Shown in pieces: positions 44,461 through 64,000 of a stretch of DNA of 64,000 nucleotides. Location: IMG/VR virus record IMGVR_UViG_3300047472_000309, positions 186,001-250,000 of that record; one strand, given 5' to 3'. The translations under genes were made by a program, and so were the position numbers. The notes under the pieces were generated by a model, which was given only the letters and a program-made list of their open reading frames with translations, did no database searches and had not been told where the DNA came from. Position 1 is the first letter of the stretch; each line of letters begins with the position of its first letter.

Positions 44461-44477
44461 TGCTTTTTTCACCAAAG

Positions 44478-44521
44478 AATAAAAAGGGAGACACCCCAAC
44501 TCCTGTGCTAGAAGTGTCTCC
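44478..44521 (-). terminator. Probable terminator
   Basis: GGAGACAC/GTGTCTCC stem followed by CTTTTTATT on the minus strand. Confidence 0.55.
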
Positions 44522-44531
44522 ATAAAACGGG

Positions 44532-48873: not shown

Positions 48874-49941
48874 TTAGTCAACCGTGAAGGGTGCCGTAGG
48901 CGGCGTGAAGTTTGCGGTGTAGCGCGCCAGGGCGCTGATGCGCAACTCGTCGAGATAGCCCTGCACCGGCAACGCAGTGTTCGCCGCATAGTTACCGACG
49001 GTCAGCGGGCTCGTGTTATCACCCCAGGTATTCGGACTCGTCTTGGTCATTACGGCGACGCCGTCGAGATACAGCGTGTAGGCGGTGCCGTGTTTGACAA
49101 AGGCGTAATGGTGCCAGTTACTAATGCTGGGGGCGGGCGACATATTGTATTCGCCGAGAGTATCCAAAGACGAATAGATATTGCCGCCGTAAATCTCGAT
49201 AATCGTCGTGCCCTTGTGAATGATCACCCCTTCGGCGTTCGAACTATTCAGATAGAGCCAGAACTCGATAGTGAAATCAGATTTCAAGTGCAGATTAGCG
49301 ACATCAGGTGTTTGAACATAACTGCCACTCACACCCAGCATGGACGAGCCACCAAATTTCGACTGGGCAGTAGACAAGGCTACGGTGCCCGTTCTGGTGA
49401 AGGTGTGCTGACCCGTGGTGTCGGTAAAAGTAGTGGAGCCATTCGCCCCGTCCATGTGCATGAGCAGAACAGTCTGGGGGGTCGCCCAGTTCAGATTCAC
49501 CGTCGCAGTGCCATCTTCGTAAATCAATGACCCGCTCGCCTGGATGGTGGCCGTAGCTGCTCCACCACCTGCTGGATAAGTCGGTGCGCTCACCCAGCTG
49601 ATTTCGCCGCGAATGAAACCATACCAGTCTGCCACCAAAGCGAGTGTGGCAGCCGGGTCGGTGGTACCACTGGGAATAACTACTGCGCCGGTTGGACTGG
49701 CTATTTCTGCCGCCAAGGCGAGACGCTTATACGTGATATCGACACTACCGATAAAGTTCGCATAATTACCCTGCGGGCCGGTGCCGGTCAAGGTCACTTT
49801 AGTATCTGCGCCATTGGCAAAAGAACCTGTTTGTAAATTACTCACCGTGACTTCATTGGGCAGATTAGGCGCCGAGGCATTCGTGGCGTCGATCAAAGCC
49901 AGCAGATTTTCTACCGGGGTTTTGCTAGGATTGATTTTCAT
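48874..49941 (-). CDS. Tail fibre protein: family-A attachment module plus LamG/ConA lectin domain
   Basis: LLALID..N...YKRL.L N-module; TVLLMHMDG...FTIEFW...WHHYAFV...GYLDELRIS..ARYT.NFTPP. Confidence 0.85.
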   Translation of the reverse strand: MKINPSKTPVENLLALIDATNASAPNLPNEVTVSNLQTGSFANGADTKVTLTGTGPQGNYANFIGSVDITYKRLALAAEIASPTGAVVIPSGTTDPAATLALVADWYGFIRGEISWVSAPTYPAGGGAATATIQASGSLIYEDGTATVNLNWATPQTVLLMHMDGANGSTTFTDTTGQHTFTRTGTVALSTAQSKFGGSSMLGVSGSYVQTPDVANLHLKSDFTIEFWLYLNSSNAEGVIIHKGTTIIEIYGGNIYSSLDTLGEYNMSPAPSISNWHHYAFVKHGTAYTLYLDGVAVMTKTSPNTWGDNTSPLTVGNYAANTALPVQGYLDELRISALARYTANFTPPTAPFTVD

Positions 49942-49944
49942 CTG

Positions 49945-51039
49945 TTAGTCCATCGTGAAAGGAGCCGCGGACGGGGTAAAGTTACTCGTGTAGCGCGCTA
50001 CACGAGAAATGCGCACTTCATCAATGTCGCCATTGAAGTAAAGTTCTGAACCCGCTGCCACCACCACTGCTCCAATCGATGCAGCATACACAGGGGTCGG
50101 CAGTGCATTACTGGCAGTGATTGAGGCTTTGGCAACCCCGTTGATGTAGATGGTCCAGACGTTGCCTGAACGCACTAATGCGACGTGCTGCCAAGTGTTA
50201 GCCACAATGGTGCCTGCGGCCGTGCCCAAGCCATTGATGAAGTACGAACCAGTGGAGGCGCTGTTTGACGCATACAGTGCCAGACCGCCGCCGGATGAAT
50301 ATAATTGCAAACCCCACGAACAGCAAATAATTCCGCGCTGCGCTGCATCGACCACGCTAGGGTTGATCCAGGCTTCGAGGGTGAAGTCACCAGCCTGAAA
50401 ATTCATCAGGCTATTAGAAAACGTCAGGGCGGCTGCACCGTTAAAAGCAGCCGAGCCTGCGCCGAACTTCTTCGCGGCTGTACTGAGTGTGACCGCACTA
50501 TTAGTAAGGGTGGCGCCGCCGTCATCGGTAAAGGGGATGGCATCAGCGTGGACCAGCAGATTAGTGAGCGGTTGGGTCCAGTTGACCGTGACGCTGGTCG
50601 AGCCGTCCTCGTAGACGTAGGAGCCACTTGATTGCAGCGTCACCGAGCCATTACCTGAACTCGCGGGAATCGTCAAACCGGGGGCGGTAATTTCACCCGG
50701 AATGAAGCCGTAATAGTTCTCGATCGCAAGCAGCGCAGCCGCGAGCGACGATGCGCGAGACACGGCAAGCGTACCGGTCGGGCTTGCTGTTTCTGCCGCC
50801 AGCGTCAGGCGCTTATACGTCACATCGACGCTGCCGGTAAAGTTGGCGTAATTACCCTGCGGGCCTGCACCAGTGAGGGTTATCTTCGTATCGGCGCCGT
50901 TCGCATACGTGCCTGACTGAAGGTTACTCACTGTCACCTCATTGGGAAGATTCGGCGCGGAAGGGTTCGAGGCATCAATAAGTGCCAACAGGTTTTGAAG
51001 GGCACTCTTACTCGGATCAATTTTCATACTGGTCGCCAA
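49945..51039 (-). CDS. Tail fibre protein: family-A module plus LamG domain; recent paralogue of 48874..49941
   Basis: Near-identical N-terminus; DFTLEAWI...WQHVALVR...GDIDEVRISR. Start may be ATG 51027. Confidence 0.85.
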   Translation of the reverse strand: MATSMKIDPSKSALQNLLALIDASNPSAPNLPNEVTVSNLQSGTYANGADTKITLTGAGPQGNYANFTGSVDVTYKRLTLAAETASPTGTLAVSRASSLAAALLAIENYYGFIPGEITAPGLTIPASSGNGSVTLQSSGSYVYEDGSTSVTVNWTQPLTNLLVHADAIPFTDDGGATLTNSAVTLSTAAKKFGAGSAAFNGAAALTFSNSLMNFQAGDFTLEAWINPSVVDAAQRGIICCSWGLQLYSSGGGLALYASNSASTGSYFINGLGTAAGTIVANTWQHVALVRSGNVWTIYINGVAKASITASNALPTPVYAASIGAVVVAAGSELYFNGDIDEVRISRVARYTSNFTPSAAPFTMD

Positions 51040-51077
51040 AATGAGGAGAGGTCATAAAATGCCCGTGTACGAATTGA

Positions 51078-51110
51078 CGGCATAAAAAAGCGGAGCCGAA
51101 GCCCCGCTTT
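51078..51110 (-). terminator. Terminator (UUCG loop) followed by TTTTTTATGCCG
   Basis: AAAGCGGGGC-TTCG-GCTCCGCTTT. Confidence 0.85.
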
Positions 51111-51128
51111 TCCTCAGCACTGAAATGC

Positions 51129-51677
51129 TTAGCTGGCGGCGTCGAAACCCGAGAGATCCGTCGTCGCAACAGCCGTGGACAGCGCAACCTGCGGCGCTTG
51201 CCAGGTCATGGCGATTGCTTGCAGCGAACCGTCCACGTACAGCAACGAACCCGCATTGGCCACCAGATCGAGCGTGGCCTGATTGCCGCTCTGCGCACCC
51301 GAAAGCGCCACGCCGGGATCGGCCGGATCTTCAAGATGCACTTCCGAGGCCACGAGGCCGAGCTGGGCGGCCAGTGCCGTGACGATGTCAGCGGCTGTGG
51401 TGCCGGTGGTCGCGGTATAGCTATCGACCGGGCTGAGCACCGAGTCGTTCAGACCCCGGCGCGTGTAGTTGACCGAGACCGAACCCGTGTAGCCCTGACC
51501 ACCAACGGCCGTCAGTGCCACTGTGGTATTACGGCCGTCGCCCGTATCGGACTTGACGCTGGGTGCACCTGCAGTCACTTGCGTGTTCGTGATCGTTTGG
51601 CCGGTGTTAGCAGCATTGACGAGCGCGAGCAGGTTGTCCAACGCCGACAACGATGCGTTGATTTTTGCCATTTCCAT
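51129..51677 (-). CDS. Family-A module-only virion protein
   Basis: LLALVNAAN...GRNTTV.LT...YTGSVSVNYTR; ends TDLSGFD. Confidence 0.75.
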   Translation of the reverse strand: MEMAKINASLSALDNLLALVNAANTGQTITNTQVTAGAPSVKSDTGDGRNTTVALTAVGGQGYTGSVSVNYTRRGLNDSVLSPVDSYTATTGTTAADIVTALAAQLGLVASEVHLEDPADPGVALSGAQSGNQATLDLVANAGSLLYVDGSLQAIAMTWQAPQVALSTAVATTDLSGFDAAS

Positions 51678-51759
51678 TCCTTAAAGGGAGTGTTCTACTG
51701 CGGCTTGCGCACCTCTTTTTTATAAGAGATACACATAAGATTCAAATATTTTTTACTTC

Positions 51760-53307
51760 TTAGTCTATCGTGAATGCCGCAGCAGGCGGGGTGAAGTTTG
51801 CCGAGTAACGAGCAATCTTACTAAGGCGTAGCTCATCGATCCGGCCACTGAACGGCAGGTACGTGCTACCATTCAGGAAGCTACCGATCCACAACGCATA
51901 GTTGTTGCTACCAAACGTCGCGGAGCTCGTAACAGACTGAACCAATACCCCATCAACAAAACACGACCAGGTGTTGCCAGAGCGCACAAACGCAAAGTGC
52001 TGCCACGTTCCAACTTTGGTCTTCGACGAGTCCGGTGTGCCGACGATGACAGTGCCATCGGGACCCAAGATACGAACCAATCCACTAGTGGACTGGATGT
52101 ACTGATACCCGGCCTGCGCCGAAGTACCTTTGGACAGGATCATGCCGTTCTGGGTTATGTTGGTGTGCCATGCCCAGAATTCGATCGTGAGATCGCCCGT
52201 AAAGCTCAGATCCCCTGGATCGGTCACTGCAAGATAACCGGAACCCGACGGGAAATAGCCCGCCCCAAACATGCCGACGCTGCCTGCTGCCGCTGCGCCG
52301 TTGTTCGTCACCGTATGGCTGAGAACTTCCGTGTAGCCGGTATTGCCTGCATTATCGAAATGCATCAACAGCTTCGTACTGGCGGCAGGTCCTTGACCGG
52401 CAGCGTTGGCAAAGCCCGGCAGATTCAAGCTAGTGACCGCCGCGCTCAGCGCCACTGTGTTCATCAGGTAGACGTCGGTACCCGGCTTATACACGTAACT
52501 GTTTGCATCAGCCACCAGGTGAAGCTTGGTGGTGCCTGCAGCAACGGGACCGTCTACCACATCCATCGGATCAAGGGCCAAGCCATACTTCGTGTTGACC
52601 TGCGCGATCAGGGCACGGATCGTCGTGGCCGAGGCGATCGTACCGAGCAACCAGGTGTTATTGGCGCCACCTAGAAACGCGTTCGCAATATCCGTGCGAT
52701 TGTAATACAGCTTGTACGTGCCCGAGTACTGCTGCAGCAACGTCCCGATCGGCGCCACCGTCACGTAGGTGTTACAGTTCAGCTTCGAACTATCTACAAC
52801 GGGCGCGCTCACCGATAACTGCGACTGGGAGATCGTCTGCTTCGCGTCAGCCTGAATCAATGCCCACAAGCCCGTCAAACCACCTGTCTTGACCTGGGCC
52901 AGTTTCTTCTGCATGACGAATGCAGAGATTTGACGCAACTGACCTTTGGTTGACGACTTCTGCATCACAAAAGCTGACACCTGACGCAGCGCGCCACTAC
53001 TGGACAGCTTCGTCCACGTCACAGCAGGCATTGCCCGGAACCGGGCCGTCAGCGCATCCTGCGTCCATTGCAAGGCTGCCACGCGCCGAATTGACACTGC
53101 GGGATAATCTTGCGACCATTGCAGGGCTGTCACCTTACGCAACGTAACTGGGGTGGGTGAGCTGAACCACTGCACCGCCTGCATCTGACGGAAATACGCG
53201 TTGATGTTTTGTGTCGTCCACACGACAGGCGCGGCTTGACGAACCTGGGCACTGCTGCTCGTTCCTTGCCACACCAGTGGAGCGAAGTAGCGAATTGTTG
53301 TCGTCAT
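51760..53307 (-). CDS. Fibre/scaffold protein: eight 17-aa repeats, family-A module and LamG domain
   Basis: Arg at residues 6, 23, 40, 57, 74, 91, 108, 125; YKLYYNRTDI; LLMHFD...GRIDELRLSKIARY. Confidence 0.85.
   Translation of the reverse strand: MTTTIRYFAPLVWQGTSSSAQVRQAAPVVWTTQNINAYFRQMQAVQWFSSPTPVTLRKVTALQWSQDYPAVSIRRVAALQWTQDALTARFRAMPAVTWTKLSSSGALRQVSAFVMQKSSTKGQLRQISAFVMQKKLAQVKTGGLTGLWALIQADAKQTISQSQLSVSAPVVDSSKLNCNTYVTVAPIGTLLQQYSGTYKLYYNRTDIANAFLGGANNTWLLGTIASATTIRALIAQVNTKYGLALDPMDVVDGPVAAGTTKLHLVADANSYVYKPGTDVYLMNTVALSAAVTSLNLPGFANAAGQGPAASTKLLMHFDNAGNTGYTEVLSHTVTNNGAAAAGSVGMFGAGYFPSGSGYLAVTDPGDLSFTGDLTIEFWAWHTNITQNGMILSKGTSAQAGYQYIQSTSGLVRILGPDGTVIVGTPDSSKTKVGTWQHFAFVRSGNTWSCFVDGVLVQSVTSSATFGSNNYALWIGSFLNGSTYLPFSGRIDELRLSKIARYSANFTPPAAAFTID
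52906..53292 (-). repeat. Eight tandem 17-codon (51-nt) repeats, consensus R-x-h-x-A-h-x-W/M
   Basis: RYFAPLVW, RQAAPVVW, RQMQAVQW, RKVTALQW, RRVAALQW, RAMPAVTW, RQVSAFVM, RQISAFVM at an exact 17-aa period. Confidence 0.9.
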
Positions 53308-53317
53308 TCACTCCTCC

Positions 53318-54391
53318 TTAGTTAGTGGGCGTCAGTACGAACTGAGTCTGATTAATCTTCGTGCCCGTCCAGCTCGCACCATCCGGTGCTTTTGTCTGCC
53401 AAGGCAACTTCTGGTTTAGTACCAATCCATTGCCATTGGCAAACTGACCAAGCGATGAGACGTTACTGGAAGCGTCCGTAAAGGTCGCTGCAATCTTGGC
53501 TGGACCGGCCGCACTGGGTTGAAATGAGAGCGTCGGTTGAACTGCCAGGACTTTCTGGCCAGTATCATTAACCGTGGCGAGCATCGTCACCGCCAGGGAC
53601 TGGTTATCTACCGGAGACTGCGCATACGGACTGATGACAGGCGGGTTCTGGTTAGCCGTATTGAGTACCGTCACCAGATCGGCTGCGCCGTTGGGTGTCC
53701 ATTCCGAGCCAGAGACGGCCGCCGCGCGCGACGCTTTGGCGCGAATCGGCCCCAGTCGACCCGGCGTCGATGCATCTACATCCAGGAAGTAGAAATCGCG
53801 ATAGCCGCGCGCGTAATTCGCGCTGCCGGTCGACGCACCCCCAAAGGTAATGTAGCCGGTGCTGGCAAATACAGCGGACGTCACTGTACCGGAATTGATC
53901 AGAATGCCGTTGCCGTATACCTGGAACGTCAGCGCGACGCGATCGATAAAGACCTCGATGTAGATCTCACCACCCACTCCCACCATCCCTGCTGCGATCA
54001 GATGTGACTCATCGAGCAGCGAAGTCCAGCTACCGAAGGACGTGTTGCTGGACACGATGACAACGTGGCACGCCCCCACCGTGTTATTCACGATCAACTT
54101 CGTGCGGAAACCAAACCAATACTGCGTTGCCCCACTCCAGTCTTGCACGGCTGCGGTGGGCACGAAAAGCGCCCCACATTGTCCGGACGAATTGGCAGCG
54201 TTCGACAGAAAGCCATCGGCCGTCACGGAGAAGATGTTGCTTGGGGTACTGTTATTAACGTAGGTGAGCGGCTGACCGACGTTGCCAGTGTACTGGTTAT
54301 AGATCGTGTTGCCGTTATAACTCGATCCAGCAGCACTCAGTGTCATCCCCACTGGCGCATTCTCAAAATGCCACAAATCGTGAAGGGCCAT
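53318..54391 (-). CDS. Family-B virion/fibre protein (probable beta-sandwich)
   Basis: MALHDLWHFE; FGFRTK; YIEVFID; RGYRDFYFLD...RLGPI. Confidence 0.75.
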   Translation of the reverse strand: MALHDLWHFENAPVGMTLSAAGSSYNGNTIYNQYTGNVGQPLTYVNNSTPSNIFSVTADGFLSNAANSSGQCGALFVPTAAVQDWSGATQYWFGFRTKLIVNNTVGACHVVIVSSNTSFGSWTSLLDESHLIAAGMVGVGGEIYIEVFIDRVALTFQVYGNGILINSGTVTSAVFASTGYITFGGASTGSANYARGYRDFYFLDVDASTPGRLGPIRAKASRAAAVSGSEWTPNGAADLVTVLNTANQNPPVISPYAQSPVDNQSLAVTMLATVNDTGQKVLAVQPTLSFQPSAAGPAKIAATFTDASSNVSSLGQFANGNGLVLNQKLPWQTKAPDGASWTGTKINQTQFVLTPTN

Positions 54392-54406
54392 GTTCGTTAC
54401 TCTCTA

Positions 54407-55441
54407 TTACGGGGTGAGGGTCGCGACCATCGCCGCCAGCGACTGAGGCGTGAAGGACGTCCCATCCGGTGCTTTCTCGAGCACAAACGCGTTCTGATTC
54501 CAGTACATTTGTGCGCCGTTCGGATAGGTAATCTGTTTACCATTAACAGACTGGCCATTATACGCAACACTTGCCTGTGGTGCGAAGATGTAGCTTGGCG
54601 TGCGCTGACCCGACACGTCCGCTTTTGCAGCGAGAATACTTTCGCCTGCAATCAGGCCCGCATTCGAGAGCTTGAACTGCAGCGGGTCCATGCTCGCGGG
54701 CTCCGTCACCAGCGGTGCATTTTGCGTCGGCGTCGTTATACCCAGCGCCGTCGACAGATCAGCAAGCGCCGTGCTGCTATCGCTGGAGGTCCAGTTCGGT
54801 GCCGTCACGCTGGCCAAAGCAGCTGGCGTAACATCAATCGGACCAAGACGATTGCACTGTGTGGCGTCTTGCGTGTCGTCTAGGAAATAGACGTCGCGAA
54901 TCTGGAACACGTAGCCCGCTGCGCCGTTATTCCCCCACACCAGGTTACACTTGTTATCCGCCGACACAAACGCATTGAAGTCGAAGAACACCGAGGGCTG
55001 CGCCACACCATCGATCCAGACGACGATCTGCGTATTCGCCCGGTCGATCATGATTTCGACGTACTGGTTGGTATTGAGCGCGAGTTGCGTATTGCTCACC
55101 AACGTTTGTTTGGTGCCCGCTGTATTCGTCAAGAACAACACCGGTGTGGCGGTCGCGATATTATTGATGCTGACCCGAAAACCGATGAAACTGCGCCGGG
55201 TCGTAAAATCACTGAGCGCCTGATACGGATGATTCGCATTGGGCGAATAGGTCCCGTAATTCGTATTCGGATAGGGGTTAGTATCCGTGCGGAAATACAG
55301 CCAGCCACCGCTCGAATAGATTGTCCCATACTGGCTGTAAACACCGGTGATGGTGAAGTCACCGCGCAAGAACTGCATCACCGTCGTATAGGTGGTGTAA
55401 GCAGGCAGATTGTCGAAGCCCCAAAAATCTCGGATAGCCAT
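54407..55441 (-). CDS. Family-B virion/fibre protein
   Basis: MAIRDFWGFD; IGFRV; YVEIMID; RDVYFLDD...RLGPI. Confidence 0.75.
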   Translation of the reverse strand: MAIRDFWGFDNLPAYTTYTTVMQFLRGDFTITGVYSQYGTIYSSGGWLYFRTDTNPYPNTNYGTYSPNANHPYQALSDFTTRRSFIGFRVSINNIATATPVLFLTNTAGTKQTLVSNTQLALNTNQYVEIMIDRANTQIVVWIDGVAQPSVFFDFNAFVSADNKCNLVWGNNGAAGYVFQIRDVYFLDDTQDATQCNRLGPIDVTPAALASVTAPNWTSSDSSTALADLSTALGITTPTQNAPLVTEPASMDPLQFKLSNAGLIAGESILAAKADVSGQRTPSYIFAPQASVAYNGQSVNGKQITYPNGAQMYWNQNAFVLEKAPDGTSFTPQSLAAMVATLTP

Positions 55442-55464
55442 CTTTAAACTCTCTTGATGATAAC

Positions 55465-55507
55465 GAACATAAAAACCCCGACACCCTCCCTGAGGAGAGC
55501 GTCAGGG
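55465..55507 (-). terminator. Hairpin followed by TTTTTATG
   Basis: Imperfect stem at 55476-55507. Confidence 0.6.
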
Positions 55508-55521
55508 CTCTCGTGCCGTTA

Positions 55522-56598: not shown

Positions 56599-56680
56599 GT
56601 TAATCTCTCTTCAAAGAAACTGGGTCTGGAAGCCATTTAGTAAAAAAATAACTTCCAGAATACACATCATTAGCCGCCTT

Positions 56681-58354
56681 TTAGTCGAGCACAAAGGGTG
56701 CCGCAGGCGGGGTAAAGTTCGCGGTGTAGCGCGCGATGTTACTCACCCGCAGTTCATCGATGTAGCCTGGGAACTGCGAAGCCGTGTTGTACTGGTTGCC
56801 GCCAATCGTCCACGTACTACCCGATAGTCCAAAGGTCAGTGCCGACGTCAGAGTACCTTGGGCGACCCCGCCGATGTAACCCGTGTAGACACCATTCGCG
56901 TACACCACAGCACAGTGCTGCCATTTGTTTAGCGTAAAGGCTGCAGCCGAGGCCAGTGACTTCCAGCCCGAGCCGTCGGTCAGGTAGATACCCAGTCCCT
57001 TGTCGCTTTGCTGACCAATGGAGGTTTGTGTCGTCGTCGTGTTGGCGGTCTTCGAACTGAGAATGGTTGTGTCGCCCAGGGCTGCGGTCCGATAGAGCCA
57101 GAACTCAACCGTCATGGCGTTACCAAGCACCATCGTCGAATCGGAGGCAACCGAGAGGTTACCTGTGGTACCCGAGTTATACGACTTGCTCCCCATGGCC
57201 ACTTGACCCGTGGTAAGCACGCCATTACCGTTCGACGTCCAGGTCCGACCTGTGTCATCGACAAAGCTTTCCATGTGCATCAAGAGCACGGTGTTCAGGG
57301 TCTTCGGCGTGAGGATCGCGCTCGTCGCATTGATCTTTGCCGGAGTCCACAACCCACCATCCGGTGCCTTACGCTGCACGCCCCACTTCTGGTTATAGAG
57401 GTTCGTGTTCGGTGACACCACAATTTTACCCGCATCCAGCGTGTTCGATGCCTGACTAAACGACACATCGATCGAATTCGACGCTGAATCACCGATCAGG
57501 GTAAGTTGTGGCTGCACGGCGATGATGGGGGTATTCGCCGACACACCGGTGCTCATGTTCGCAGTCACGGGTTGATTATTCGCCGGGGCTGACGCACTAG
57601 GCGTCGTGACCGGCGGGTTCTGCAAGGCAGTCGTGATTGCTGTCGGCAAATCCGCCGCACTATTGAGCGTCCAGCCCGCTCCAGCGATATTCGAAAGCGC
57701 GGCGGGCGAGGAGCGAATCGGTCCCAATCGTACCGTATCCGTGCTGTCGAAATCCAGGAAGTAGAAGTCCCGATAACCTCGTGCAGCATTCGCCGTACCT
57801 GCCGTACCGCCCGTACCAAATACACCATAGCCGGTTGCGGGAAACGCGCTGGCGCCATACGCCGCCGAGCGCACGAGATTACCATTCACATACAACCAGT
57901 ACGTGAATGTCGCTGAGTCCACGATGAGCTCCACATAGAGCTCAGTATTGGCGGGGGCCACCAGATCTGCTTCGTTGATCCAGATCAGCAGCGTGGCGGT
58001 CGCCCAGCCTGCGGTTGTAATGAAGACTCGGCCAGGCGTGGAGCCTGTGACGGCCTGAGTCGACTTGGTGCGAAAACCAATGCCCCACTTGGTGGCCCCC
58101 GACATGTTCAGCGCCTGCGCCAGCTTGAACCAAATCATGCTCCCGTTGCCGCTGGAGTTATTCGTCGAAGTGGCAAAGCCGTTTGCATCCACTGCAAGCG
58201 GGCTGCTTGCGTAGGTGTACGTGCAGCCTGGATTGCCCGTATAGTAGTTGTAAACGTTGCTCGGACCCGTTGTCGAGGTGAGGTCAGTCGTGCCGGTGAG
58301 CAAACTTGTACCCACTGGCGCATTATCAAACGACCACAAGTCATGGATTGCCAT
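56681..58354 (-). CDS. Family-B virion/fibre protein with an appended C-terminal LamG domain
   Basis: MAIHDLWSFD...RGYRDFYFLD..RLGPI; TVLLMHME...GYIDELRVSNIARY. Confidence 0.8.
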   Translation of the reverse strand: MAIHDLWSFDNAPVGTSLLTGTTDLTSTTGPSNVYNYYTGNPGCTYTYASSPLAVDANGFATSTNNSSGNGSMIWFKLAQALNMSGATKWGIGFRTKSTQAVTGSTPGRVFITTAGWATATLLIWINEADLVAPANTELYVELIVDSATFTYWLYVNGNLVRSAAYGASAFPATGYGVFGTGGTAGTANAARGYRDFYFLDFDSTDTVRLGPIRSSPAALSNIAGAGWTLNSAADLPTAITTALQNPPVTTPSASAPANNQPVTANMSTGVSANTPIIAVQPQLTLIGDSASNSIDVSFSQASNTLDAGKIVVSPNTNLYNQKWGVQRKAPDGGLWTPAKINATSAILTPKTLNTVLLMHMESFVDDTGRTWTSNGNGVLTTGQVAMGSKSYNSGTTGNLSVASDSTMVLGNAMTVEFWLYRTAALGDTTILSSKTANTTTTQTSIGQQSDKGLGIYLTDGSGWKSLASAAAFTLNKWQHCAVVYANGVYTGYIGGVAQGTLTSALTFGLSGSTWTIGGNQYNTASQFPGYIDELRVSNIARYTANFTPPAAPFVLD

Positions 58355-58441
58355 AACCTACTCCAATGTAATTCGATGACATAAGCGGACACCCAATCTC
58401 CTCTCCTCACCTAGGAGAAGAGACCGAATGCCCTCTCATGT

Positions 58442-60166
58442 TTAGTTGATGTTCGCCGCTGTGGTCGACTGCGGTTGCAACACCAGGTTAGTCGCCGAAA
58501 TGGTACTGCTAGTCCAGGCGTTGCCATTCGGATCGGTCGTCTGAATGCCCGCCAGATCTCGTGTGTACTGCGCTGCGGTATCGCGAAACTGATACGTCGC
58601 CAGTGCCTTGTTGGTTGCGCCTTCTTGGAGCGAAGCCAACAGGTTTGTCGCAAACGGTACCTGCGCGGCGAGCTTATACTGCATCGCGAGAACCTTCTGT
58701 CCGGCCGGAACGCTCGCAGAGAAGTTCACCGTCATGGGTTGATTATCCGCGCCGTTTTGGACGAACGGTGTAATAGCAGGTGTGGCCGCGTAAGCCGTTT
58801 GCAAAGCCGACACTGTGTTACCACTCGAATCTGCCACGTACGTCGAGCCATTAAGCACGCTCGCGTCCAGATGCATCAGGAGCATTGTGTTGGCATCCGT
58901 CGTGAACGGCCCAGTCGGCGGAGTAAAGCCTGTCGTGTAGCGTGCCACATTCGAGACCCGGAACTCATCAATGTAACCTTGCCAGGGACTGGTTAGATTG
59001 TTATTATTGCCGAGAATCAGGTTCGCCGTATTGTTACCGAATGTCGCGTTGCTCGCCACGTTACCCAACGCCACCCCGTTCTGGTAAATGGTCCAGGTGC
59101 CTTGGTAGCGGACCAGCGCCAGATGGAACCACTGGTTGACCACCGGGTTACCTGTCACACTGAGCGCGGGCGTGCCCGAACTCTGGTCGGTAAGGAGCTG
59201 CCACACGCCTGAGACATATTGCAAACGCCCCCACGGTGAAGCGCCTGAGTCCTTACCCAGAAAACCTGCCGACTGCCCAGCATTGGTGCTCATGGCCCAG
59301 CACTCGTACGTCATGTCACCCGTTACCGTGCGGTACTGCACGGCATCAGGAATCACCACTGCGCCGCTGGCAGCACCATTCGTCGTAAATGAAGCGGGGC
59401 CAAACTTCGCCTGAGCATTCGAAATCGCCGATGCGCCATTCAGCGTACCGATAAAGTTTCCGTAGTTCGGCGCTTGCACGCCGCTGACAAGCGGGCTAAG
59501 CGGCGTGCTCGTGATCGGACCGAGACGACCATTGGGCTTGGTGGCGTCCACATCCAAGAAGTAGAAGTCTCGGAAGGCCTGTCCGAACGAGCCGCTAAAG
59601 GTTTGACCACTGTAGACGAAGTGAGTGAAACCGGTTGGCAGCGTCCCACTGGTAGTCGGCAGGCCATTGACGTAAGTCTGATACGTGTGGTTAGCGTTAT
59701 CCAGGAAAACTTCGACGTACTGTGCACCTGCTACGCCCGCTGTCACGCGATTAAGCTGGGTTTCGTTGATAAGTGAAACAATGTTAGCGCCTGAACTGCC
59801 GAGCGCGCCCGACGCGGAAGACGGCAACACACCGAAACAATTACAACCGCTTGGTGCAAGACCAGTGGCGTAGGTACGGAAGCCCAACCAGGCCTGCGTA
59901 GCGCCACCCTGAAACAGACCAGAATCCGCCAGCGAAATCACATAACCCGCATACAGCGTGGAGTTACTGACCGCCAAACTCAGCCAACCCGGTGAAGGCG
60001 TGGTGCTGATGTTAGCGCCATTGGAGCTGTTGCCGGTCATGATCGCGCCAGGCGCGCCGTACTGAGTCTGAAGGCTATTCGGCGTGGCATAGGTAGTGCC
60101 GACCGTCAACGCAAACGCAGCCGTGAGCTGAACATGGTCAAACGAGATTAATGCGCGGAGCGTCAT
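58442..60166 (-). CDS. Family-B virion/fibre protein with an internally inserted, circularly permuted LamG domain
   Basis: MTLRALISFD; the LamG core ends ARYTTGFTPP then DANTMLLMHLD, after which family-B sequence resumes. Confidence 0.8.
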   Translation of the reverse strand: MTLRALISFDHVQLTAAFALTVGTTYATPNSLQTQYGAPGAIMTGNSSNGANISTTPSPGWLSLAVSNSTLYAGYVISLADSGLFQGGATQAWLGFRTYATGLAPSGCNCFGVLPSSASGALGSSGANIVSLINETQLNRVTAGVAGAQYVEVFLDNANHTYQTYVNGLPTTSGTLPTGFTHFVYSGQTFSGSFGQAFRDFYFLDVDATKPNGRLGPITSTPLSPLVSGVQAPNYGNFIGTLNGASAISNAQAKFGPASFTTNGAASGAVVIPDAVQYRTVTGDMTYECWAMSTNAGQSAGFLGKDSGASPWGRLQYVSGVWQLLTDQSSGTPALSVTGNPVVNQWFHLALVRYQGTWTIYQNGVALGNVASNATFGNNTANLILGNNNNLTSPWQGYIDEFRVSNVARYTTGFTPPTGPFTTDANTMLLMHLDASVLNGSTYVADSSGNTVSALQTAYAATPAITPFVQNGADNQPMTVNFSASVPAGQKVLAMQYKLAAQVPFATNLLASLQEGATNKALATYQFRDTAAQYTRDLAGIQTTDPNGNAWTSSTISATNLVLQPQSTTAANIN

Positions 60167-60235
60167 GATTCCCTCTGTCAAAAAGCTTAATGCATATTCC
60201 AGGAAAGCCTCTGGGAGGCTCTCCCAGAATCGGTA

Positions 60236-60580
60236 TTACGCTTGTCGCGGCGTTTCGTTGTACTGCAAAACCAGAAGATTGTGTGGACCATTCGCCCACG
60301 GCAACTCCAGCACCAACGCGTACTTGAACAAAGCGTTCGAGGGTAGGTGCGTGTGGTTCACGCCGTTAAACTTCACCTCAGTCCCAGCCAACGTATAAGG
60401 CTCTTCTTCTTTGTCGGTCCATTGGGCACGATGCTCGCCCTTGTCATGGGTGCTCAAAGATGCCGCCAGAAGCGTCGCATCCGTCGCACTCAATACACCG
60501 AGTGGTACTTTCGTCAGCACATCACCATCGCTGGAAAAGTCCGTGAAGAAGAGATAGTTCGGCCAAAAAGTCGTTGCCAT
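60236..60580 (-). CDS. Stand-alone C-terminal half of a family-A fibre protein
   Basis: TTFWPNYLFFTDFSS resembles AVYGPAYLYPYDFTS; FKYALVLEL...LLVLQYN resembles YKYVMAIQL...LYLHYN; AAGGA RBS. Confidence 0.65.
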   Translation of the reverse strand: MATTFWPNYLFFTDFSSDGDVLTKVPLGVLSATDATLLAASLSTHDKGEHRAQWTDKEEEPYTLAGTEVKFNGVNHTHLPSNALFKYALVLELPWANGPHNLLVLQYNETPRQA

Positions 60581-60593
60581 CTCACATCCTTTC

Positions 60594-61094
60594 TTAGAAG
60601 CCCGTCAGTACGTTCGAGTAGAACAGATTACTGATGTTAGGCAAGGGAGCCAACACGCAGTCAAATGACCCGGTGTACCCGTAGGAGGTCGACAGCGCAG
60701 TCAACGTCACGTGGGTGTTACCGTCGCTGCCGGTCGTGGTCTGCGCGTCGGCAATATCTGCCATCGTGAGCGTGAAGCCATACTGGTCACGAATCGTGGT
60801 GAGCACCGTGGACACATCGTTACCCGGTGCGGCCGTAATCAGCACCGGCGAGAAGTTGGACCACGCACCCAGATCGAGTCGATCGTAGTACAGCGTCAGG
60901 TAGCCCCGCATGGGAGCGCCCGGATTCATCAACACACTAACTTTGGTGTTCTTTCCACCCGCCACGTCCGCTTGTTCAGCGGTGGTCGTAGGCTTGATAG
61001 CCTGGACAGTGAATTGGCTTGAAGTAACCGTCAGGCCAGAGGCCGCACTGATCATTGACGCGAGGTCATCAATCGAGCTTTGATACAGACTCAC
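60594..61094 (-). CDS. Family-A module-only protein (N-terminal half)
   Basis: KNTKVSV...GYLTLYYDRLDL; ends NVLTGF. Confidence 0.75.
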   Translation of the reverse strand: MSLYQSSIDDLASMISAASGLTVTSSQFTVQAIKPTTTAEQADVAGGKNTKVSVLMNPGAPMRGYLTLYYDRLDLGAWSNFSPVLITAAPGNDVSTVLTTIRDQYGFTLTMADIADAQTTTGSDGNTHVTLTALSTSYGYTGSFDCVLAPLPNISNLFYSNVLTGF

Positions 61095-61106
61095 GCTGAC
61101 CTCCCG

Positions 61107-61988
61107 TTAATTAAAATGCAAGTAGAGCTGACCCTGAAACCAGGACCCTGCGACAGCCGTGATCACTGTCACGTTAGCGTACTTGTTACTGTTCGCACCC
61201 GGCACGCTTGCAGCGGGCAGCACATAGCGCGTCATCGCCAAATTACCCAGACCGCCTTGGGTAGCTGAATCCTGCCCACTGAAATTCAGGTCTGGGCGGC
61301 TTTGTTGCAAATACGCGAGCACAGCCGAGTAGTTCGCCTGGGTCCAGTTGGTCGGTGTGGCTGACGCAACGGACGAAGGCAAAGCCAGCAAGGCCGTGCG
61401 AATCTGTGAGCAATCCAACCCATAGGTCAACACGTCGGCTTGGGGCTTACGGCCACCGCCAAAGGTATTGCCCCCTGGATACAGCTTACCAGCGAGCACT
61501 TGATTCGTGATCGCCTGGTGCATGGTCGGCACCCCCTGCGTCCACTTAAACGTGAACGAGCCTTCGTAGCACAGCGAGCCTGCGACGATCGAAACCGGGT
61601 ACGACGTTCCGGAGGTAAAGCTCGTGTTGCTAAAGTCACTCGGCACCAACTCCGTACCGTACTTCGTATTGAACGCCGTACAGAACTGCGCCGCCGTCAT
61701 GGTAGTTGAGCCGAGATAGTTATCCAGCGTCAACGTCATGCTGCGGAAAAGATTGGCGAGGTTAATTCGCCGGTAGTACAGCGTCTGCGTCCCGATATAC
61801 TTACCGAGGTTACCCGGCACTGAGAGCAGTCTAAGACTCGTGTCCTGGATCTGTCCCGACCCAGGCGTTACTGCAGTTGGCACCAACGTCCGAAGCATGT
61901 CGACCGTCAGCGGCACCTTCAAGCCCGGATTCGACGTGTTAATCAACCCGAGCAAGGTGTTCAACTGCGTGTCAAGAAATGGGTACAT
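61107..61988 (-). CDS. Family-A virion/fibre protein
   Basis: LLGLINTSN...YIGTQTLYYRRINL; C-terminal LYLHFN. Confidence 0.78.
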   Translation of the reverse strand: MYPFLDTQLNTLLGLINTSNPGLKVPLTVDMLRTLVPTAVTPGSGQIQDTSLRLLSVPGNLGKYIGTQTLYYRRINLANLFRSMTLTLDNYLGSTTMTAAQFCTAFNTKYGTELVPSDFSNTSFTSGTSYPVSIVAGSLCYEGSFTFKWTQGVPTMHQAITNQVLAGKLYPGGNTFGGGRKPQADVLTYGLDCSQIRTALLALPSSVASATPTNWTQANYSAVLAYLQQSRPDLNFSGQDSATQGGLGNLAMTRYVLPAASVPGANSNKYANVTVITAVAGSWFQGQLYLHFN

Positions 61989-62004
61989 TCAACACCTCGT
62001 TTCA

Positions 62005-62034
62005 GGGAGTGGGGGTGACCCACTCCCCTATGCT
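62005..62034. terminator. Hairpin with TATGCT on the plus side
   Basis: GGGAGTGGG-GGTGA-CCCACTCCC-CTATGCT. Confidence 0.65.
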
Positions 62035-62040
62035 CTCGAC

Positions 62041-62934
62041 TTAGAAGTTGTTCGGGTCGAACGGATCGTTGTAGTGCAGATACAACGTGCCCGAAGGCGT
62101 CGTCTGACTCGCCGCCAGCTGAATGGCCATCACGTACTTGTACGCCGGATTAGTCGGATTGTTCACTGCGTCATTCAGTCCGTTCGAGAGAATGGTCGCC
62201 CCCGTCAAGTTCCAAGTCGTGTTCGCACCCGTGTCCACCCACAACGCCTTACCTGCGCCAACATCTACCGCCTGGATAGCGGCTAACACGGCATCGAGCT
62301 GCGCTTGCGTCATCGCGCCCGGCGCATAGGTGAGGAAGGTCGATTGCCATGACGTAAAGTCGTACGGATACAGATAGGCCGGACCGTACACCGCGGTAGC
62401 GGGCGGTGCTGACGCATCGGCCACCGGATAGTTAATACCCGGCAATTGCGTGGTCGAGGCAGCTGCATCAAGCGGCACGCCGCCTGCGACGACATTGAGC
62501 ATCACACTACCTTGCCAGCCAAGCGAATTCGGATCGGCCGAAAGCTGCACCTGACCCGTACCGTCGCCATTGAGCGTGATGGGCAGATTCTGCAAATCCC
62601 CCTGCACGAACTGGATACCCAGGTAGTATGCGAGCTGCGGTAGGATGTCCCAGGTCGTCTGAGGGTTGCTCACGGCCAGATCCGTGACACCGGGCAGATT
62701 GGCCAGCTGGGCCAAATCGAGGCGATTGTAGAGAATCACCTGCGAGCCTTGATAACTTACTGAAGCCGCCGTTACTTTCACAGCGGTGTTGCGATCGCTT
62801 GACAGACCTTGCCAGGTCCCCGAGACCACTTTCGGATTCGAGAACGACAGATCAGACGCCATAAACGGCGTCGCATTGGCCGCGTTGATCGCGTTCAGCA
62901 AATCAGTCAAGGATGGGAGTTGAAAAGTCGACAT
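62041..62934 (-). CDS. Family-A virion/fibre protein
   Basis: LLNAINAAN...RNTAVKV...YQGSQVILYNRLDL; LYLHYND. Confidence 0.78.
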   Translation of the reverse strand: MSTFQLPSLTDLLNAINAANATPFMASDLSFSNPKVVSGTWQGLSSDRNTAVKVTAASVSYQGSQVILYNRLDLAQLANLPGVTDLAVSNPQTTWDILPQLAYYLGIQFVQGDLQNLPITLNGDGTGQVQLSADPNSLGWQGSVMLNVVAGGVPLDAAASTTQLPGINYPVADASAPPATAVYGPAYLYPYDFTSWQSTFLTYAPGAMTQAQLDAVLAAIQAVDVGAGKALWVDTGANTTWNLTGATILSNGLNDAVNNPTNPAYKYVMAIQLAASQTTPSGTLYLHYNDPFDPNNF

Positions 62935-62943
62935 ATCTCACCC

Positions 62944-63921
62944 TTAAACGTTGTAATGCAAGATGATCCGGCCCGCACCCCACGACGCTGCTCCAGGCAG
63001 ATCGAGATACAGTGCGCGATTGAAGTACTTGCTGTCCGCTTCCGGCAGGGCCGCACTGGGCAGGGTCACGTTCGTGAACTTTAGCCCATACAGACTGTAC
63101 GGGGTCGAGGCCGGATTGGTGAAGTTGTACTGCCCGACGGTTGCTGCGTTGATCGAAGCCAGCAGCGAGTTATGGACTGTCGCGCCTGTGCCGGTTTGGG
63201 TGCCCAGGGCGTAGCTGGTCAAGTAAACAAGGACTTGAGCCAAGCTCTGGCTCGCCGCTACACCCGCTTGGTTAAGCGCATTAGTCCAGTCAATCGAGTA
63301 GAAATCCAGATCCGGCACGTAGATCGAGTTATCGACCACGTTACGCCCACCAGGGAACACTCGCGCGTTTTCCAGACTCGTCACCGAAATCATCGAACCG
63401 ATGTCTTGCGGCGCTTGCACCCAGTAAAGCGCAAAGCTCCCGATGAAACCGGGGCTGCCGGTGGCGGCAGCGACGTTCACCGAGCTGTTACGCGTGCCTG
63501 CGGCCAGACCGATCGCCGCAACGGCGTTGGTGTTACCCGCGGGCAGGCTTGCATCGACGATGTCGGTTGCGCTCAGGCTCAGACCGTACTTGGCGTTGAT
63601 CGATGGCAACAAGTCCGAGATCTTGTACGGGGAAACACCTGCTCCAGCAGGCGAATACTTGTAAATAACGATCGGCAGATTGCGAAACAAAATGCCGAAA
63701 TCCAACCGACGATACAACAGCGTGGTGTTACCCACGTATTTGGTTCCGGCCTGTGCGGTGACCTTGATCGACGTATTCTGAACATTACCGCCCGTGGGAG
63801 TGACAGCGGTCGGCGTCCCGTAAAGCGCATTCGTCGCGGTCAGCGGTACAGGCAGAGAGGGATTCGCTTGGTTGATCAGGTCAACCAGCATCTGCATGGA
63901 CTGCTTGGGATAAAGAGACAT
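62944..63921 (-). CDS. Family-A virion/fibre protein
   Basis: LVDLINQAN...QNTSIKV...YVGNTTLLYRRLDF; IILHYNV. Confidence 0.78.
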   Translation of the reverse strand: MSLYPKQSMQMLVDLINQANPSLPVPLTATNALYGTPTAVTPTGGNVQNTSIKVTAQAGTKYVGNTTLLYRRLDFGILFRNLPIVIYKYSPAGAGVSPYKISDLLPSINAKYGLSLSATDIVDASLPAGNTNAVAAIGLAAGTRNSSVNVAAATGSPGFIGSFALYWVQAPQDIGSMISVTSLENARVFPGGRNVVDNSIYVPDLDFYSIDWTNALNQAGVAASQSLAQVLVYLTSYALGTQTGTGATVHNSLLASINAATVGQYNFTNPASTPYSLYGLKFTNVTLPSAALPEADSKYFNRALYLDLPGAASWGAGRIILHYNV

Positions 63922-63931
63922 GGTTCAAGCC

Positions 63932-64000
63932 CTAACGATTTTCGAGGACGTTGTAGTGAAAGTACAGGGCGCTGCCATAGAAGACGCCGCCCCAAATCGT
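63932..64000 (-). CDS. 3' end of another family-A protein entering from outside the window
   Basis: Translates TIWGGVFYGSALYFHYNVLENR*, carrying the family LYxHYN end motif. Confidence 0.75.
   Translation of the reverse strand, partial: TIWGGVFYGSALYFHYNVLENR

What the first reader, a model, noticed from the sequence alone, without database searches (positions are those of the whole stretch)
48874..64000. Mix-and-match array of about 15 fibre genes from two backbones and one mobile LamG cassette
Seen: family A (LLxLINxxN...NT...Y.G...Y.RL.L) in ten ORFs and family B (MA[LI]xxxWxF[DE]...RDFYFLD...RLGPI) in five. A LamG cassette is attached in five genes: appended to A (48874, 49945, 51760), appended to B (56681) and inserted in B (58442). 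Four end in similar DNA encoding ARY..NFTP..APF..D*. No invertase, recombinase or reverse transcriptase is present. Inference: host range is diversified by homologous recombination among paralogues and by simultaneous display of many heads.
Basis: partly seen in the sequence, partly recalled or inferred. Interest (0 to 1): 0.6.

Follow-up and report, generated by a model that had tools for sequence, protein, structure and literature searches.

The report
Jumbo-phage filament genes with swappable lectins
This is a tandem array, in a soil nucleus-forming jumbo phage, of recently described DUF7941 "fibre cloud" virion proteins interleaved with lectin-like proteins; one sugar-binding LamG module has moved repeatedly between two unrelated protein scaffolds, so it is a further example of a kind first described in 2026.

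Summary
Window 48874-64000 (minus strand) carries 14 co-oriented ORFs plus the tail of a 15th, part of a 19-gene, 19.5-kb array.

- **Family A** is Pfam DUF7941: SPN3US virion "paralog family B", phiKZ gp126/127, Goslar gp22/23.
- **Family B** has five members: a ConA-like jelly-roll plus a beta-sandwich, as in Chi gp32-34.
- **LamG**: all six Laminin_G_3 domains of the genome lie in this array.

The genome encodes a chimallin homologue, so it is a chimallivirus related to Burkholderia phage FLC9.

A 2026 paper showed that Goslar gp22 forms filaments and proposed that DUF7941 proteins polymerise into a baseplate-anchored host-recognition cloud. These are therefore filament genes rather than classical tail fibres, and the kind is already known.

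The "mobile cassette" idea is supported over evolutionary time. Array LamGs form one clade, and the scaffold type switches at least four times within it. Orthologues show replacement of single domains.

Ongoing homologous recombination among paralogues is not supported. They are 25-45% identical, and their longest shared exact DNA match is 17 nt. The ARY..NFTPP..PF ending is a hallmark of the whole LamG subfamily. The one exception is the tandem pair 48874/49945, which is fused in register in a soil relative.

The parts
48874..49941 (-). DUF7941 N-terminal domain (about aa 1-155) joined directly to a LamG domain (about aa 150-355). It lacks the linker motif and the C-terminal domain, so it is a predicted filament-end 'cap with head'.
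   Evidence: Pfam DUF7941 aa 6-109 and Laminin_G_3 aa 206-337. BLAST of aa 2-159 to the N-terminal domain of 51129. Alignment A4 shows LamG strand LLMHMD where other members carry the linker motif.
49945..51039 (-). Tandem paralogue of 48874 (45% aa identity): DUF7941 N-terminal domain plus LamG. The copy number at this site varies between relatives, one gene or two.
   Evidence: A 254-nt repeat at 74% identity with spacing 1086. L004, L005 and L006 have one gene here, FLC9 has two. A soil contig joins 49735 to 50822 in register.
51129..51677 (-). DUF7941 N-terminal domain plus linker motif only (182 aa), the same layout as Goslar gp23.
   Evidence: Pfam DUF7941 aa 10-178, E 3e-18. The protein ends at the L.GF linker motif. 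It is the best conserved member: 91-96% identical to L004 and L006.
51760..53307 (-). Eight 17-aa repeats (aa 5-132), then a DUF7941 N-terminal domain and linker motif, then LamG.
   Evidence: Pfam. Repeat register. The LamG part is 28% identical to L006 and 26% to FLC9, against 80% and 73% for the N-terminal domain. Its LamG clusters with the third LamG of the B-type FLC9 gp314.
53318..54391 (-). Family B: ConA-like jelly-roll (aa 1-217) plus a C-terminal beta-sandwich (aa 222-357).
   Evidence: AF2 model with pLDDT 87 and pTM 0.86. VIA Z 14.5 to X122, sialidase lectin and PL20 domains. BFVD full-length matches at E 5e-16. phrog_2448.
54407..55441 (-). Family B paralogue. Its N-domain is replaced relative to L004 (67% identity, against 91% for the C-domain).
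55471..55512 (-). Terminator-like hairpin (19-bp stem followed by a T run) in the gap between two family B genes.
   Evidence: This is a consensus scan only.
55522..56598 (-). Family B paralogue.
56681..58354 (-). Family B with a LamG appended at the C-terminus (about aa 348-557).
   Evidence: Pfam Laminin_G_3 aa 395-542. Alignment A1. The FLC9 orthologue gp314 carries three LamGs.
58442..60181 (-). Family B with a LamG inserted between the N and C domains. The true start is probably the ATG at 60166. The insert is followed by DANTMLLMHLD, which is the start motif of a further LamG unit.
   Evidence: Pfam aa 272-414. Alignment A1. The L006 orthologue aligns from residue 6. Sequence read.
60236..60580 (-). 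Stand-alone DUF7941 C-terminal domain (114 aa). It is the second half of a split gene.
   Evidence: BLAST to 62041 aa 183-290. phrog_1037 positions 187-283. The split is conserved in FLC9, L004, L006 and L007.
60594..61094 (-). Stand-alone DUF7941 N-terminal domain plus linker motif (166 aa). It is the first half of the split gene.
   Evidence: Pfam E 7e-23, profile positions 1-169 of 276. Alignment A4.
61107..61988 (-). Full-length DUF7941 (N-terminal domain, linker, C-terminal domain). It is a divergent allele: 62-72% nt identity to L004, where the flanks reach 95%.
62041..62934 (-). Full-length DUF7941. This is the member that was modelled and the best match to SPN3US gp143 and phiKZ gp127.
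   Evidence: Pfam E 1e-50. AF2 model with pLDDT 88: N-terminal domain 1-150, low-confidence linker 155-185, C-terminal domain 185-297. Foldseek to 9xqd_0 at E 4e-7. Profile hit to PHIKZ127 at E 8e-19. tblastn to SPN3US_0143.
62944..63921 (-). Full-length DUF7941.
   Evidence: Pfam E 3e-42.
63932..64000 (-). 3' end of the next full-length DUF7941 gene (genome 249932-250807). The array runs on to genome 254378 with four more DUF7941 genes, one of which carries a LamG.

Best explanation
**What it is.** The region is the promoter-distal three quarters of a 19-gene array of virion host-recognition genes. It belongs to a chimallivirus, a nucleus-forming jumbo phage, related to Burkholderia phage FLC9.

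**Components.**
- Fourteen ORFs encode DUF7941 modules.
- Five ORFs encode an unrelated two-domain ConA-like protein, family B.
- Six genes carry a LamG domain.

**How it most likely works.**
- Inferred from Goslar and phiKZ: DUF7941 subunits polymerise head to tail. The linker, with or without the C-terminal domain, of one subunit docks on the N-terminal domain of the next. This builds long flexible filaments attached at the outer baseplate.
- Inferred from fold: the LamG and ConA-like domains are glycan-binding heads displayed on or with these filaments. Many specificities would then be presented at once, which raises the chance of first contact with a host.
- Inferred from domain layout: members with an N-terminal domain and LamG but no linker (48874, 49945) can accept a subunit but cannot donate to one, so they should sit at filament ends.

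**How it diversifies.**
- Shown: diversification is not driven by a dedicated enzyme, and not by recombination among the present paralogues.
- Shown: rare domain-boundary exchanges have moved one ancestral LamG cassette between A and B scaffolds.
- Shown: whole domains or genes have been replaced between related phages.
- Shown: the terminal tandem pair has been gained or lost.
For: **Family identity.** Pfam DUF7941 scores above its cut-off in 8 window ORFs and at 14 genomic places. Profile A2 hits phiKZ gp127 in PDB 9xqd at E 8e-19, and Foldseek gives E 4e-7. gp127 is placed in the outer peripheral baseplate (PMC13250141). tblastn hits SPN3US gp143, a member of the 20-strong virion paralog family B.

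**Published function.** Goslar gp22 and gp23 are present at about 580 and 2140 copies per virion. Purified gp22 forms filaments. Three Goslar paralogues carry carbohydrate-binding, glycoside hydrolase or LRR domains (PMC13742148).

**Architecture.** My model of 62041 has the same layout of N-terminal domain, disordered linker and C-terminal domain.

**Genomic context.** The genome has a chimallin homologue (E 6e-34) and PF12699 proteins. The neighbouring genes are homologues of phiKZ gp101 (hub), gp99 and gp98.

**Family B.** The fold is ConA-like at Z 14.5. The relatives are Chi gp32-34-type proteins encoded in the tail-tip region of siphophages.

**Cassette history.** LamG phylogeny, cross-scaffold pairs and domain-wise identities come. 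The only apparent outsider in the LamG clade, P0135, also lies in a DUF7941 array.

**No dedicated enzyme.** The genome has no reverse transcriptase or resolvase.

**Population data.** Two alleles co-exist in one rhizosphere sample, and a relative carries an in-register fusion of the tandem pair.
Against: - No virion proteomics or imaging exists for this phage or for FLC9, where every gene in the array is annotated 'hypothetical'.
- In SPN3US the family was found in particles of a tailless mutant and was classed as head protein (PMC5694885). This conflicts with an attachment only at the baseplate.
- The complex prediction for a 62041 homodimer gave no answer, so polymerisation is untested here.
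- Family B has no DUF7941 module and no detectable profile similarity to family A. How it would join the filaments, or whether it does, is unknown.
- A ConA-like fold does not prove sugar binding.
Confidence: 0.65

Rival explanations
1. The genes encode classical tail fibres, and their heads are reshuffled continually by homologous recombination among the paralogues within one genome.
For: - The genes are tandem, co-oriented and modular, and share a LamG.
- The LamG 3' ends share a 57-nt stretch.
- A soil relative has an in-register fusion of the tandem pair 48874/49945.
Against: - Paralogues are 25-45% identical in protein.
- The longest exact DNA match between any two is 17 nt, against 10-15 nt in shuffles.
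- The array order and each gene's architecture are kept in L004, L005, L006 and FLC9.
- The 3' motif is a hallmark of the whole LamG subfamily.
- No tail-fibre shaft family is detected. The only 'tail fiber' PHROG hit is weak and lies on the LamG part.
Confidence: 0.08
2. The DUF7941 paralogues are head-associated or neck-associated proteins, either capsid decoration or packaged proteins as proposed for SPN3US. They would not be baseplate-anchored filaments.
For: - SPN3US paralog family B members were detected in tailless-mutant particles and labelled 'head ejection?' (PMC5694885).
- The array lies a few genes from the PF12699 internal head protein genes.
Against: - phiKZ gp127 is fitted into outer-baseplate density, and Goslar gp22 forms filaments in vitro.
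- Fusion to LamG or other carbohydrate-binding domains makes little sense for proteins packed inside the head.
- The immediate neighbours are homologues of hub and neck proteins.
Confidence: 0.17
3. The ConA-like and LamG domains are enzymes, polysaccharide lyases or glycanases that act as depolymerases. They would not be passive binding heads.
For: - The family B N-domain matches PL7 and PL20 lyases, GH131 and GH16 enzymes at Z 11-13.
- Some Goslar DUF7941 proteins carry glycoside hydrolase domains.
Against: - Non-catalytic lectin and CBM-like domains score as high or higher: X122 and the sialidase lectin domain at Z 14.5 and 14.4.
- No catalytic-site comparison was made.
- Laminin_G_3 domains are usually binding modules. 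This rests on general knowledge and was not tested here.
Confidence: 0.1

Closest known systems
Goslar DUF7941 proteins: gp22 and gp23, plus gp86, gp92 and gp161 (Chimalliviridae 'fiber cloud'; PMC13742148)
   Same: - Same Pfam family.
- Same layout of N-terminal domain, linker and C-terminal domain.
- Multiple paralogues per genome, including N-domain-only forms.
- Forms with an N-terminal DUF7941 module followed by carbohydrate-binding domains.
- The genome is a chimallivirus.
   Different: - Here 13 N-domain-bearing genes and one stand-alone C-domain gene lie in one contiguous array.
- The appended head is always a LamG from a single clade.
- An unrelated ConA-like family is interleaved with the DUF7941 genes and shares that LamG.
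- One member carries eight 17-aa N-terminal repeats.
- No experimental data exist for this phage.
SPN3US virion paralog family B: gp83, gp138-154, gp161, gp237 (PMC5694885)
   Same: - Homologous: the best window member hits gp143 at 36% identity over its full length.
- A long tandem run of roughly 270-330-aa paralogues.
- All SPN3US members were detected in virions.
   Different: - In SPN3US the family was assigned to the head on tailless-mutant data.
- No LamG fusions or ConA-like family were looked for in that run.
phiKZ gp126 and gp127 (PDB 9xqd; PMC13250141)
   Same: Homology in both sequence and fold to the DUF7941 members. gp127 is a structural component of the outer peripheral baseplate.
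   Different: phiKZ has only about three members, and none is reported with a LamG.
Chi-like siphophage gp32-34 (phrog_2448, annotated 'carbohydrate-binding protein' in phage SeF2)
   Same: - Distant sequence match to family B (27-30% identity, E 5e-6).
- Full-length two-domain fold match.
- Tandem paralogues in a tail gene region.
   Different: - The host virus is a small siphophage, and the genes sit after the tape-measure gene.
- No LamG insertions.
- Their function and their place in the virion have not been established in the material I could read.
Dedicated tail-fibre diversifiers: diversity-generating retroelements, and Gin/Cin/Min invertase shufflons
   Same: Both give variable receptor-binding C-termini on constant N-terminal anchors.
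   Different: This genome has no reverse transcriptase, no template repeat, no invertase and no flanking inverted repeats. The variation seen is between lineages, not within a clone.

Membership tests
DUF7941 (PF25613) chimallivirus filament proteins | Pfam match above the gathering score | tested here: met
   Eight window ORFs score 30.9-173 bits against a cut-off of 27. The genome has 14 matching places.
DUF7941 (PF25613) chimallivirus filament proteins | N-terminal globular domain, disordered linker and C-terminal globular domain, with N-domain-only variants | tested here: met
   AF2 model of 62041: domains at 1-150 and 185-297 with pLDDT above 90, linker at 155-185 with pLDDT 52-59. N-domain-only members end at the linker motif.
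DUF7941 (PF25613) chimallivirus filament proteins | Homology to the structurally placed phiKZ gp127 | tested here: met
   hmmsearch E 8e-19 to 9xqd_0 PHIKZ127. Foldseek E 4e-7.
DUF7941 (PF25613) chimallivirus filament proteins | Encoded by a chimallivirus, that is a genome with a chimallin nuclear-shell protein | tested here: met
   phiKZ gp54 matches a 668-aa frame at genome 3174-4895, E 6e-34. PF12699 proteins are present.
DUF7941 (PF25613) chimallivirus filament proteins | Head-to-tail oligomerisation into filaments | tested here: inconclusive
   Complex prediction on two copies of 62041 returned 'no answer'.
DUF7941 (PF25613) chimallivirus filament proteins | Presence in the virion, attached at the peripheral baseplate | not testable with these tools
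   This rests on homologues only: SPN3US mass spectrometry, phiKZ density and Goslar mass spectrometry. The SPN3US tailless-mutant data point to the head instead.
Laminin_G_3 (PF13385) LamG domains of the ARYTxNFTPP subfamily | Pfam match above cut-off, plus the C-terminal ARY..NFTPP..PF strand | tested here: met
   Five window genes score 63-77 bits. The motif is present in 88 of the 120 best LamG matches, 119 of them from outside these arrays.
Laminin_G_3 (PF13385) LamG domains of the ARYTxNFTPP subfamily | Carbohydrate or other ligand binding | not testable with these tools
   Inferred from the fold only.
phrog_2448 / Chi gp32-34-like two-domain ConA-like proteins | Profile match and a shared two-domain fold | tested here: met
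   phrog_2448 E 2e-10 to 6e-5. tblastn to Chi-like phages E 5e-6. BFVD matches with TM 0.6-0.7 and E 5e-16 over both domains.
Classical trimeric tail fibres (phiKZ gp131 type, T4 gp34-37 type) | Fibre shaft, or a match to a known tail-fibre family | tested here: not met
   Pfam and PHROGs give no fibre family apart from one weak hit (E 1e-4) on the LamG part. The models are globular two-domain proteins.
Enzyme-driven diversification (DGR, invertase shufflon) | Reverse transcriptase or site-specific invertase, plus the cognate repeats | tested here: not met
   No RVT_1 and no Resolvase match in the whole genome. Tyrosine recombinases were not searched. Inverted repeats are 31 nt at most and 71-80% complementary.

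The most novel reading that the evidence does not exclude
The array may encode a combinatorial, self-assembling lectin coat. Under this reading:
- DUF7941 subunits would form the filament.
- N-domain-plus-LamG proteins would cap it.
- The anchor-less ConA-like family B proteins would be recruited through a dedicated docking element. One candidate is the eight 17-aa repeats at the N-terminus of 51760, the gene that directly follows the five B genes.
- The LamG unit, bounded by the conserved LLMHxD and ARYxxNFTPPxxPF motifs, would act as a recombination-ready module that can be moved between unrelated scaffolds.
Probability: 0.15. Interest if true: 0.65.

Novelty: new member of a known kind. Interest (0 to 1): 0.42.

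Why it matters
DUF7941 filaments were proposed only in 2026 as the first-contact host-recognition device of nucleus-forming jumbo phages.

This array shows the system in a soil and rhizosphere Burkholderia-type lineage. It also gives sequence-level evidence for how the heads diversify:
- one LamG lineage has spread over two unrelated scaffolds;
- whole domains have been swapped between co-occurring strains;
- the terminal gene pair has been gained or lost.

That bears on the broad host ranges reported for jumbo phages, and on the choice and tracking of FLC9-like phages used against rice seedling rot.

It also exposes an open conflict in the literature. SPN3US data place the family in the head, while phiKZ and Goslar data place it at the baseplate. 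The cultured phage FLC9 could be used to settle this.

Tried and rejected
- **Complex prediction.** Complex prediction on two copies of 62041, with alignment A2, gave 'no answer' (score 0.00). It is not evidence for or against binding.
- **PDB by single sequence.** phmmer of 62041 and 53318 against PDB sequences found nothing useful. Only the family A profile reached phiKZ gp127. The family B profile found nothing.
- **A versus B.** hhalign of family A against family B gave probability 0.5%, so there is no relationship.
- **Chi gp32-34.** Two literature searches for their function or location found no relevant paper.
- **Promoters and terminators.** Sigma-70-type promoter-like sites are at chance level (10 found against 9.4 expected). 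Terminator-like sites are barely above chance (18 against 14.9). Chimalliviruses use their own RNA polymerases, so this scan says little.
- **Enzyme-driven diversification.** DGR and invertase shufflon were rejected.
- **A single recently mobile cassette.** Rejected: the LamGs of this genome are no more alike (33-38% identity to the 48874 LamG) than the 48874 LamG is to LamG domains of other proteins.
- **Not run.** The large representative-protein search was left out, because family scans and the word search had already placed both families.

Full report
**What is in the sequence**

The window is bases 186001-250000 of a 310,654-bp IMG/VR virus record with direct terminal repeats. Between 48874 and 64000 every sizeable ORF lies on the minus strand and the genes are tightly packed.

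Pfam places DUF7941 (PF25613) in eight of them: 48874, 49945, 51129, 51760, 60594, 61107, 62041 and 62944. ORF 60236 is a free-standing C-terminal half of the same family. Together with 60594, which is an N-terminal half, it forms a split gene. The split is kept in every relative examined.

Five ORFs form a second family that has no Pfam model: 53318, 54407, 55522, 56681 and 58442. Their invariant columns are GFR, D.YF.D.D and RLGPI.

It is appended in four and inserted between the two family B domains in 58442.

The array does not stop at the window's edge. Five more DUF7941 genes follow, one of them with a LamG. The total is 19 ORFs over genome 234874-254378. All six Laminin_G_3 domains of the genome lie in this array.

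**What kind of phage**

The nearest named genome is Burkholderia phage FLC9, at 75% nucleotide identity over a third of the region. All of its genes here are annotated as hypothetical.

The genome encodes a homologue of the phiKZ nuclear shell protein, chimallin (E 6e-34), and several PF12699 internal head proteins. The genes just upstream of the array are homologues of phiKZ gp101 (baseplate hub), gp99 and gp98. The phage is thus a chimallivirus, and the array sits at the end of a virion structural module.

Near-identical DNA occurs in four rhizosphere metagenome runs (X1-X4), two of which may be the source sample, and fragments of relatives occur in soil runs.

**What family A is**

A profile of 62 homologues hits phiKZ gp127 in PDB entry 9xqd (E 8e-19). 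An AlphaFold2 model of 62041 (pLDDT 88) matches the same chain by Foldseek (E 4e-7). [quoted passage not shown]

tblastn finds the family in 95 phage records, mostly Erwinia, Salmonella, Serratia and Klebsiella jumbo phages. The SPN3US hit is gp143. gp143 belongs to 'paralog family B', twenty proteins that were all found in virions by mass spectrometry (PMC5694885).

A Science Advances paper of November 2026 (PMC13742148) describes the family as follows:
- DUF7941 proteins are among the most abundant Goslar virion proteins.
- Purified gp22 forms filaments.
- The linker and C-terminal domain of one subunit are predicted to dock on the N-terminal domain of the next.
- Some paralogues carry carbohydrate-binding, hydrolase or LRR domains.
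- The family is restricted to chimalliviruses.

My model shows the same three-part layout, with a low-confidence linker at residues 155-185. In the alignment of all paralogues, a short L.G(F/L/I) motif follows the N-terminal domain. The N-domain-only proteins end right at this motif.

So the 'fibre genes' are filament subunits of a recently described kind. They are not classical trimeric fibres.

**What family B is**

The model of 53318 (pLDDT 87, pTM 0.86) has two parts.
- The N-terminal domain is a ConA-like jelly-roll. It gives Z 14.5 to the X122 domain and similar scores to sialidase lectin domains, Cip1, and PL7 and PL20 lyases.
- The second part is a beta-sandwich.

The whole two-domain fold recurs in proteins of 320-400 aa from Chi-like and other siphophages (E 5e-16, TM 0.6-0.7). 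By sequence, the only named relatives outside FLC9 are Chi gp32-34-type genes. These are three tandem paralogues placed after the tape-measure gene, and one record annotates them as carbohydrate-binding.

There is no profile similarity between families A and B. How B proteins would join the filaments is unknown.

**Is the LamG a mobile cassette?**

Two facts speak against recent mobility.
- The LamG domains of this genome are only 33-38% identical to that of 48874. That is no closer than the 48874 LamG is to thousands of LamG domains elsewhere (4521 hits, the best unrelated ones at 35-41%).
- The ARY..NFTPP..PF ending is present in 88 of the 120 best LamG matches, 119 of them outside these arrays. 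The 57-nt similarity at the gene ends (65-84%) therefore reflects a conserved peptide.

- In a tree of 117 LamG domains, all 26 from these arrays form one clade. They come from the window, L004, L006, L007 and FLC9.
- The only other members of that clade are the two domains of P0135. P0135 itself lies in a DUF7941 array of another phage.
- In a careful tree, this clade has 99/96 support. The scaffold label (A or B) needs at least four changes on well-supported branches, and six on the best tree.

Two pairs make this concrete.
- The LamG of the A-type terminal gene of L006 is 74.5% identical to the LamG of the B-type FLC9 gp315. The similarity begins at the domain boundary.
- Residues 207-515 of the A-type 51760 match the C-terminal end of the B-type FLC9 gp314 at 54%. 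gp314 carries three LamGs.

In 58442 the inserted LamG is followed by DANTMLLMHLD, the start motif of another LamG unit. This suggests that the insert was cut out of a tandem LamG array. That reading is an inference.

**Mosaicism between isolates**

Order and architecture are conserved in L004, L005, L006 and FLC9, but divergence is patchy.
- Against L004, nucleotide identity runs at 90-97% in places and falls to 62-72% in others. The low patches are 61107, the 5' part of 54407 and the LamG part of 51760. The terminal genes are replaced outright.
- By domain, the 51760 orthologues of the window and L006 are 80% identical in the N-terminal domain and 28% in the LamG.
- 54407 is 67% identical to L004 in the ConA-like domain and 91% in the C-domain.
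- FLC9 has an extra B paralogue (gp315), three LamGs on gp314, and a 1077-aa gp310.
- Relatives have one or two genes at the 48874/49945 position.

Contigs from public runs add three observations.
- A soil relative joins 49735 to 50822. This skips exactly the 1086-nt repeat spacing, so it is an in-register fusion of the tandem pair.
- One rhizosphere run contains two alleles of the region. The second allele's 51760 LamG is too diverged to align at 80% identity.
- These are assembled contigs, so they show presence and not frequency.

**Mechanism of diversification**

The genome has no reverse transcriptase and no resolvase-type invertase, and the inverted repeats found are short and imperfect. 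The longest exact DNA match between any two array genes is 17 nt, against 10-15 nt in shuffled sequence.

Ongoing homologous recombination among the paralogues is therefore unsupported, apart from the adjacent pair 48874/49945. The pattern fits three processes:
- rare exchanges at domain boundaries;
- allelic replacement between co-infecting relatives;
- unequal crossing-over in the terminal tandem pair.

**Open points**
- Polymerisation was not confirmed here, because the complex prediction gave no answer.
- The SPN3US tailless-mutant result conflicts with an attachment only at the baseplate. The Goslar paper does not cite SPN3US.
- Sugar binding by the LamG and ConA-like domains is inferred from fold alone.

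**Verdict**

This is a well-described, real feature: a large DUF7941 filament-gene array with lectin heads. It is a new member of a kind published in 2026.

What this work adds is evidence that one LamG lineage has been shuffled between two unrelated scaffolds and swapped between strains.

Noticed in passing
window 52906-53298 (aa 5-132 of ORF 51760-53307, minus strand): Eight repeats with an exact 17-aa period (consensus hydrophobic-R-x-hydrophobic-x-A-hydrophobic-x-W/M) precede the DUF7941 domain. They are conserved in L004, L006 and FLC9 gp310. The distant array L007 has four repeats of the same period. ORF genome 253234-253806 starts with one similar unit. Their function is unknown. A docking or branching element is one possibility.
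   Followed up: partly
window 60236-61094: A DUF7941 gene is split into an N-domain ORF (60594-61094) and a C-domain ORF (60236-60580), 13 nt apart. The split is conserved in FLC9 (gp318 and gp317), L004, L006 and L007, so it is not an assembly error.
   Followed up: partly
window 55471-55512, minus strand: A strong terminator-like hairpin (19-bp stem followed by GGGGTTTTT) lies between two family B genes. It may divide the array into two transcription units.
   Followed up: no
window 60166-60181: The listed TTG start of ORF 58442-60181 is probably wrong. The ATG at 60166 gives the conserved family B N-terminus MTLRAL, and the L006 orthologue aligns from that residue.
   Followed up: partly
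genome 89593-90024 (+), outside the window: A lone DUF7941 copy with only the N-terminal domain (152-aa frame) lies far from the array. In Goslar the most abundant filament subunit, gp23, has this N-domain-plus-linker layout.
   Followed up: no
L002 4873-9955 (genome 254772-259854): The genes directly upstream of the array are homologues of phiKZ gp101 (baseplate hub), gp99 and gp98 (neck, collar or terminator). Further upstream are PF12699 internal head protein paralogues.
   Followed up: yes
window 48874-54800 in public runs X1 and X3: The likely source sample also holds a more abundant related strain (contig depth 46 against 21) with different content around 49863-51650. Run X3 holds two alleles of 51760 and 53318 side by side.
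   Followed up: partly
window 43726-44523, minus strand: A thymidylate kinase gene (Pfam E 6e-43) lies about 4 kb past the end of the array, among small ORFs that differ between the close relatives L004, L005 and L006.
   Followed up: no
literature, not a coordinate: SPN3US mass spectrometry placed the DUF7941 family in tailless particles and called it head protein. The phiKZ and Goslar structural papers place it at the peripheral baseplate. The Goslar paper does not mention SPN3US, so the conflict has not been addressed.
   Followed up: partly
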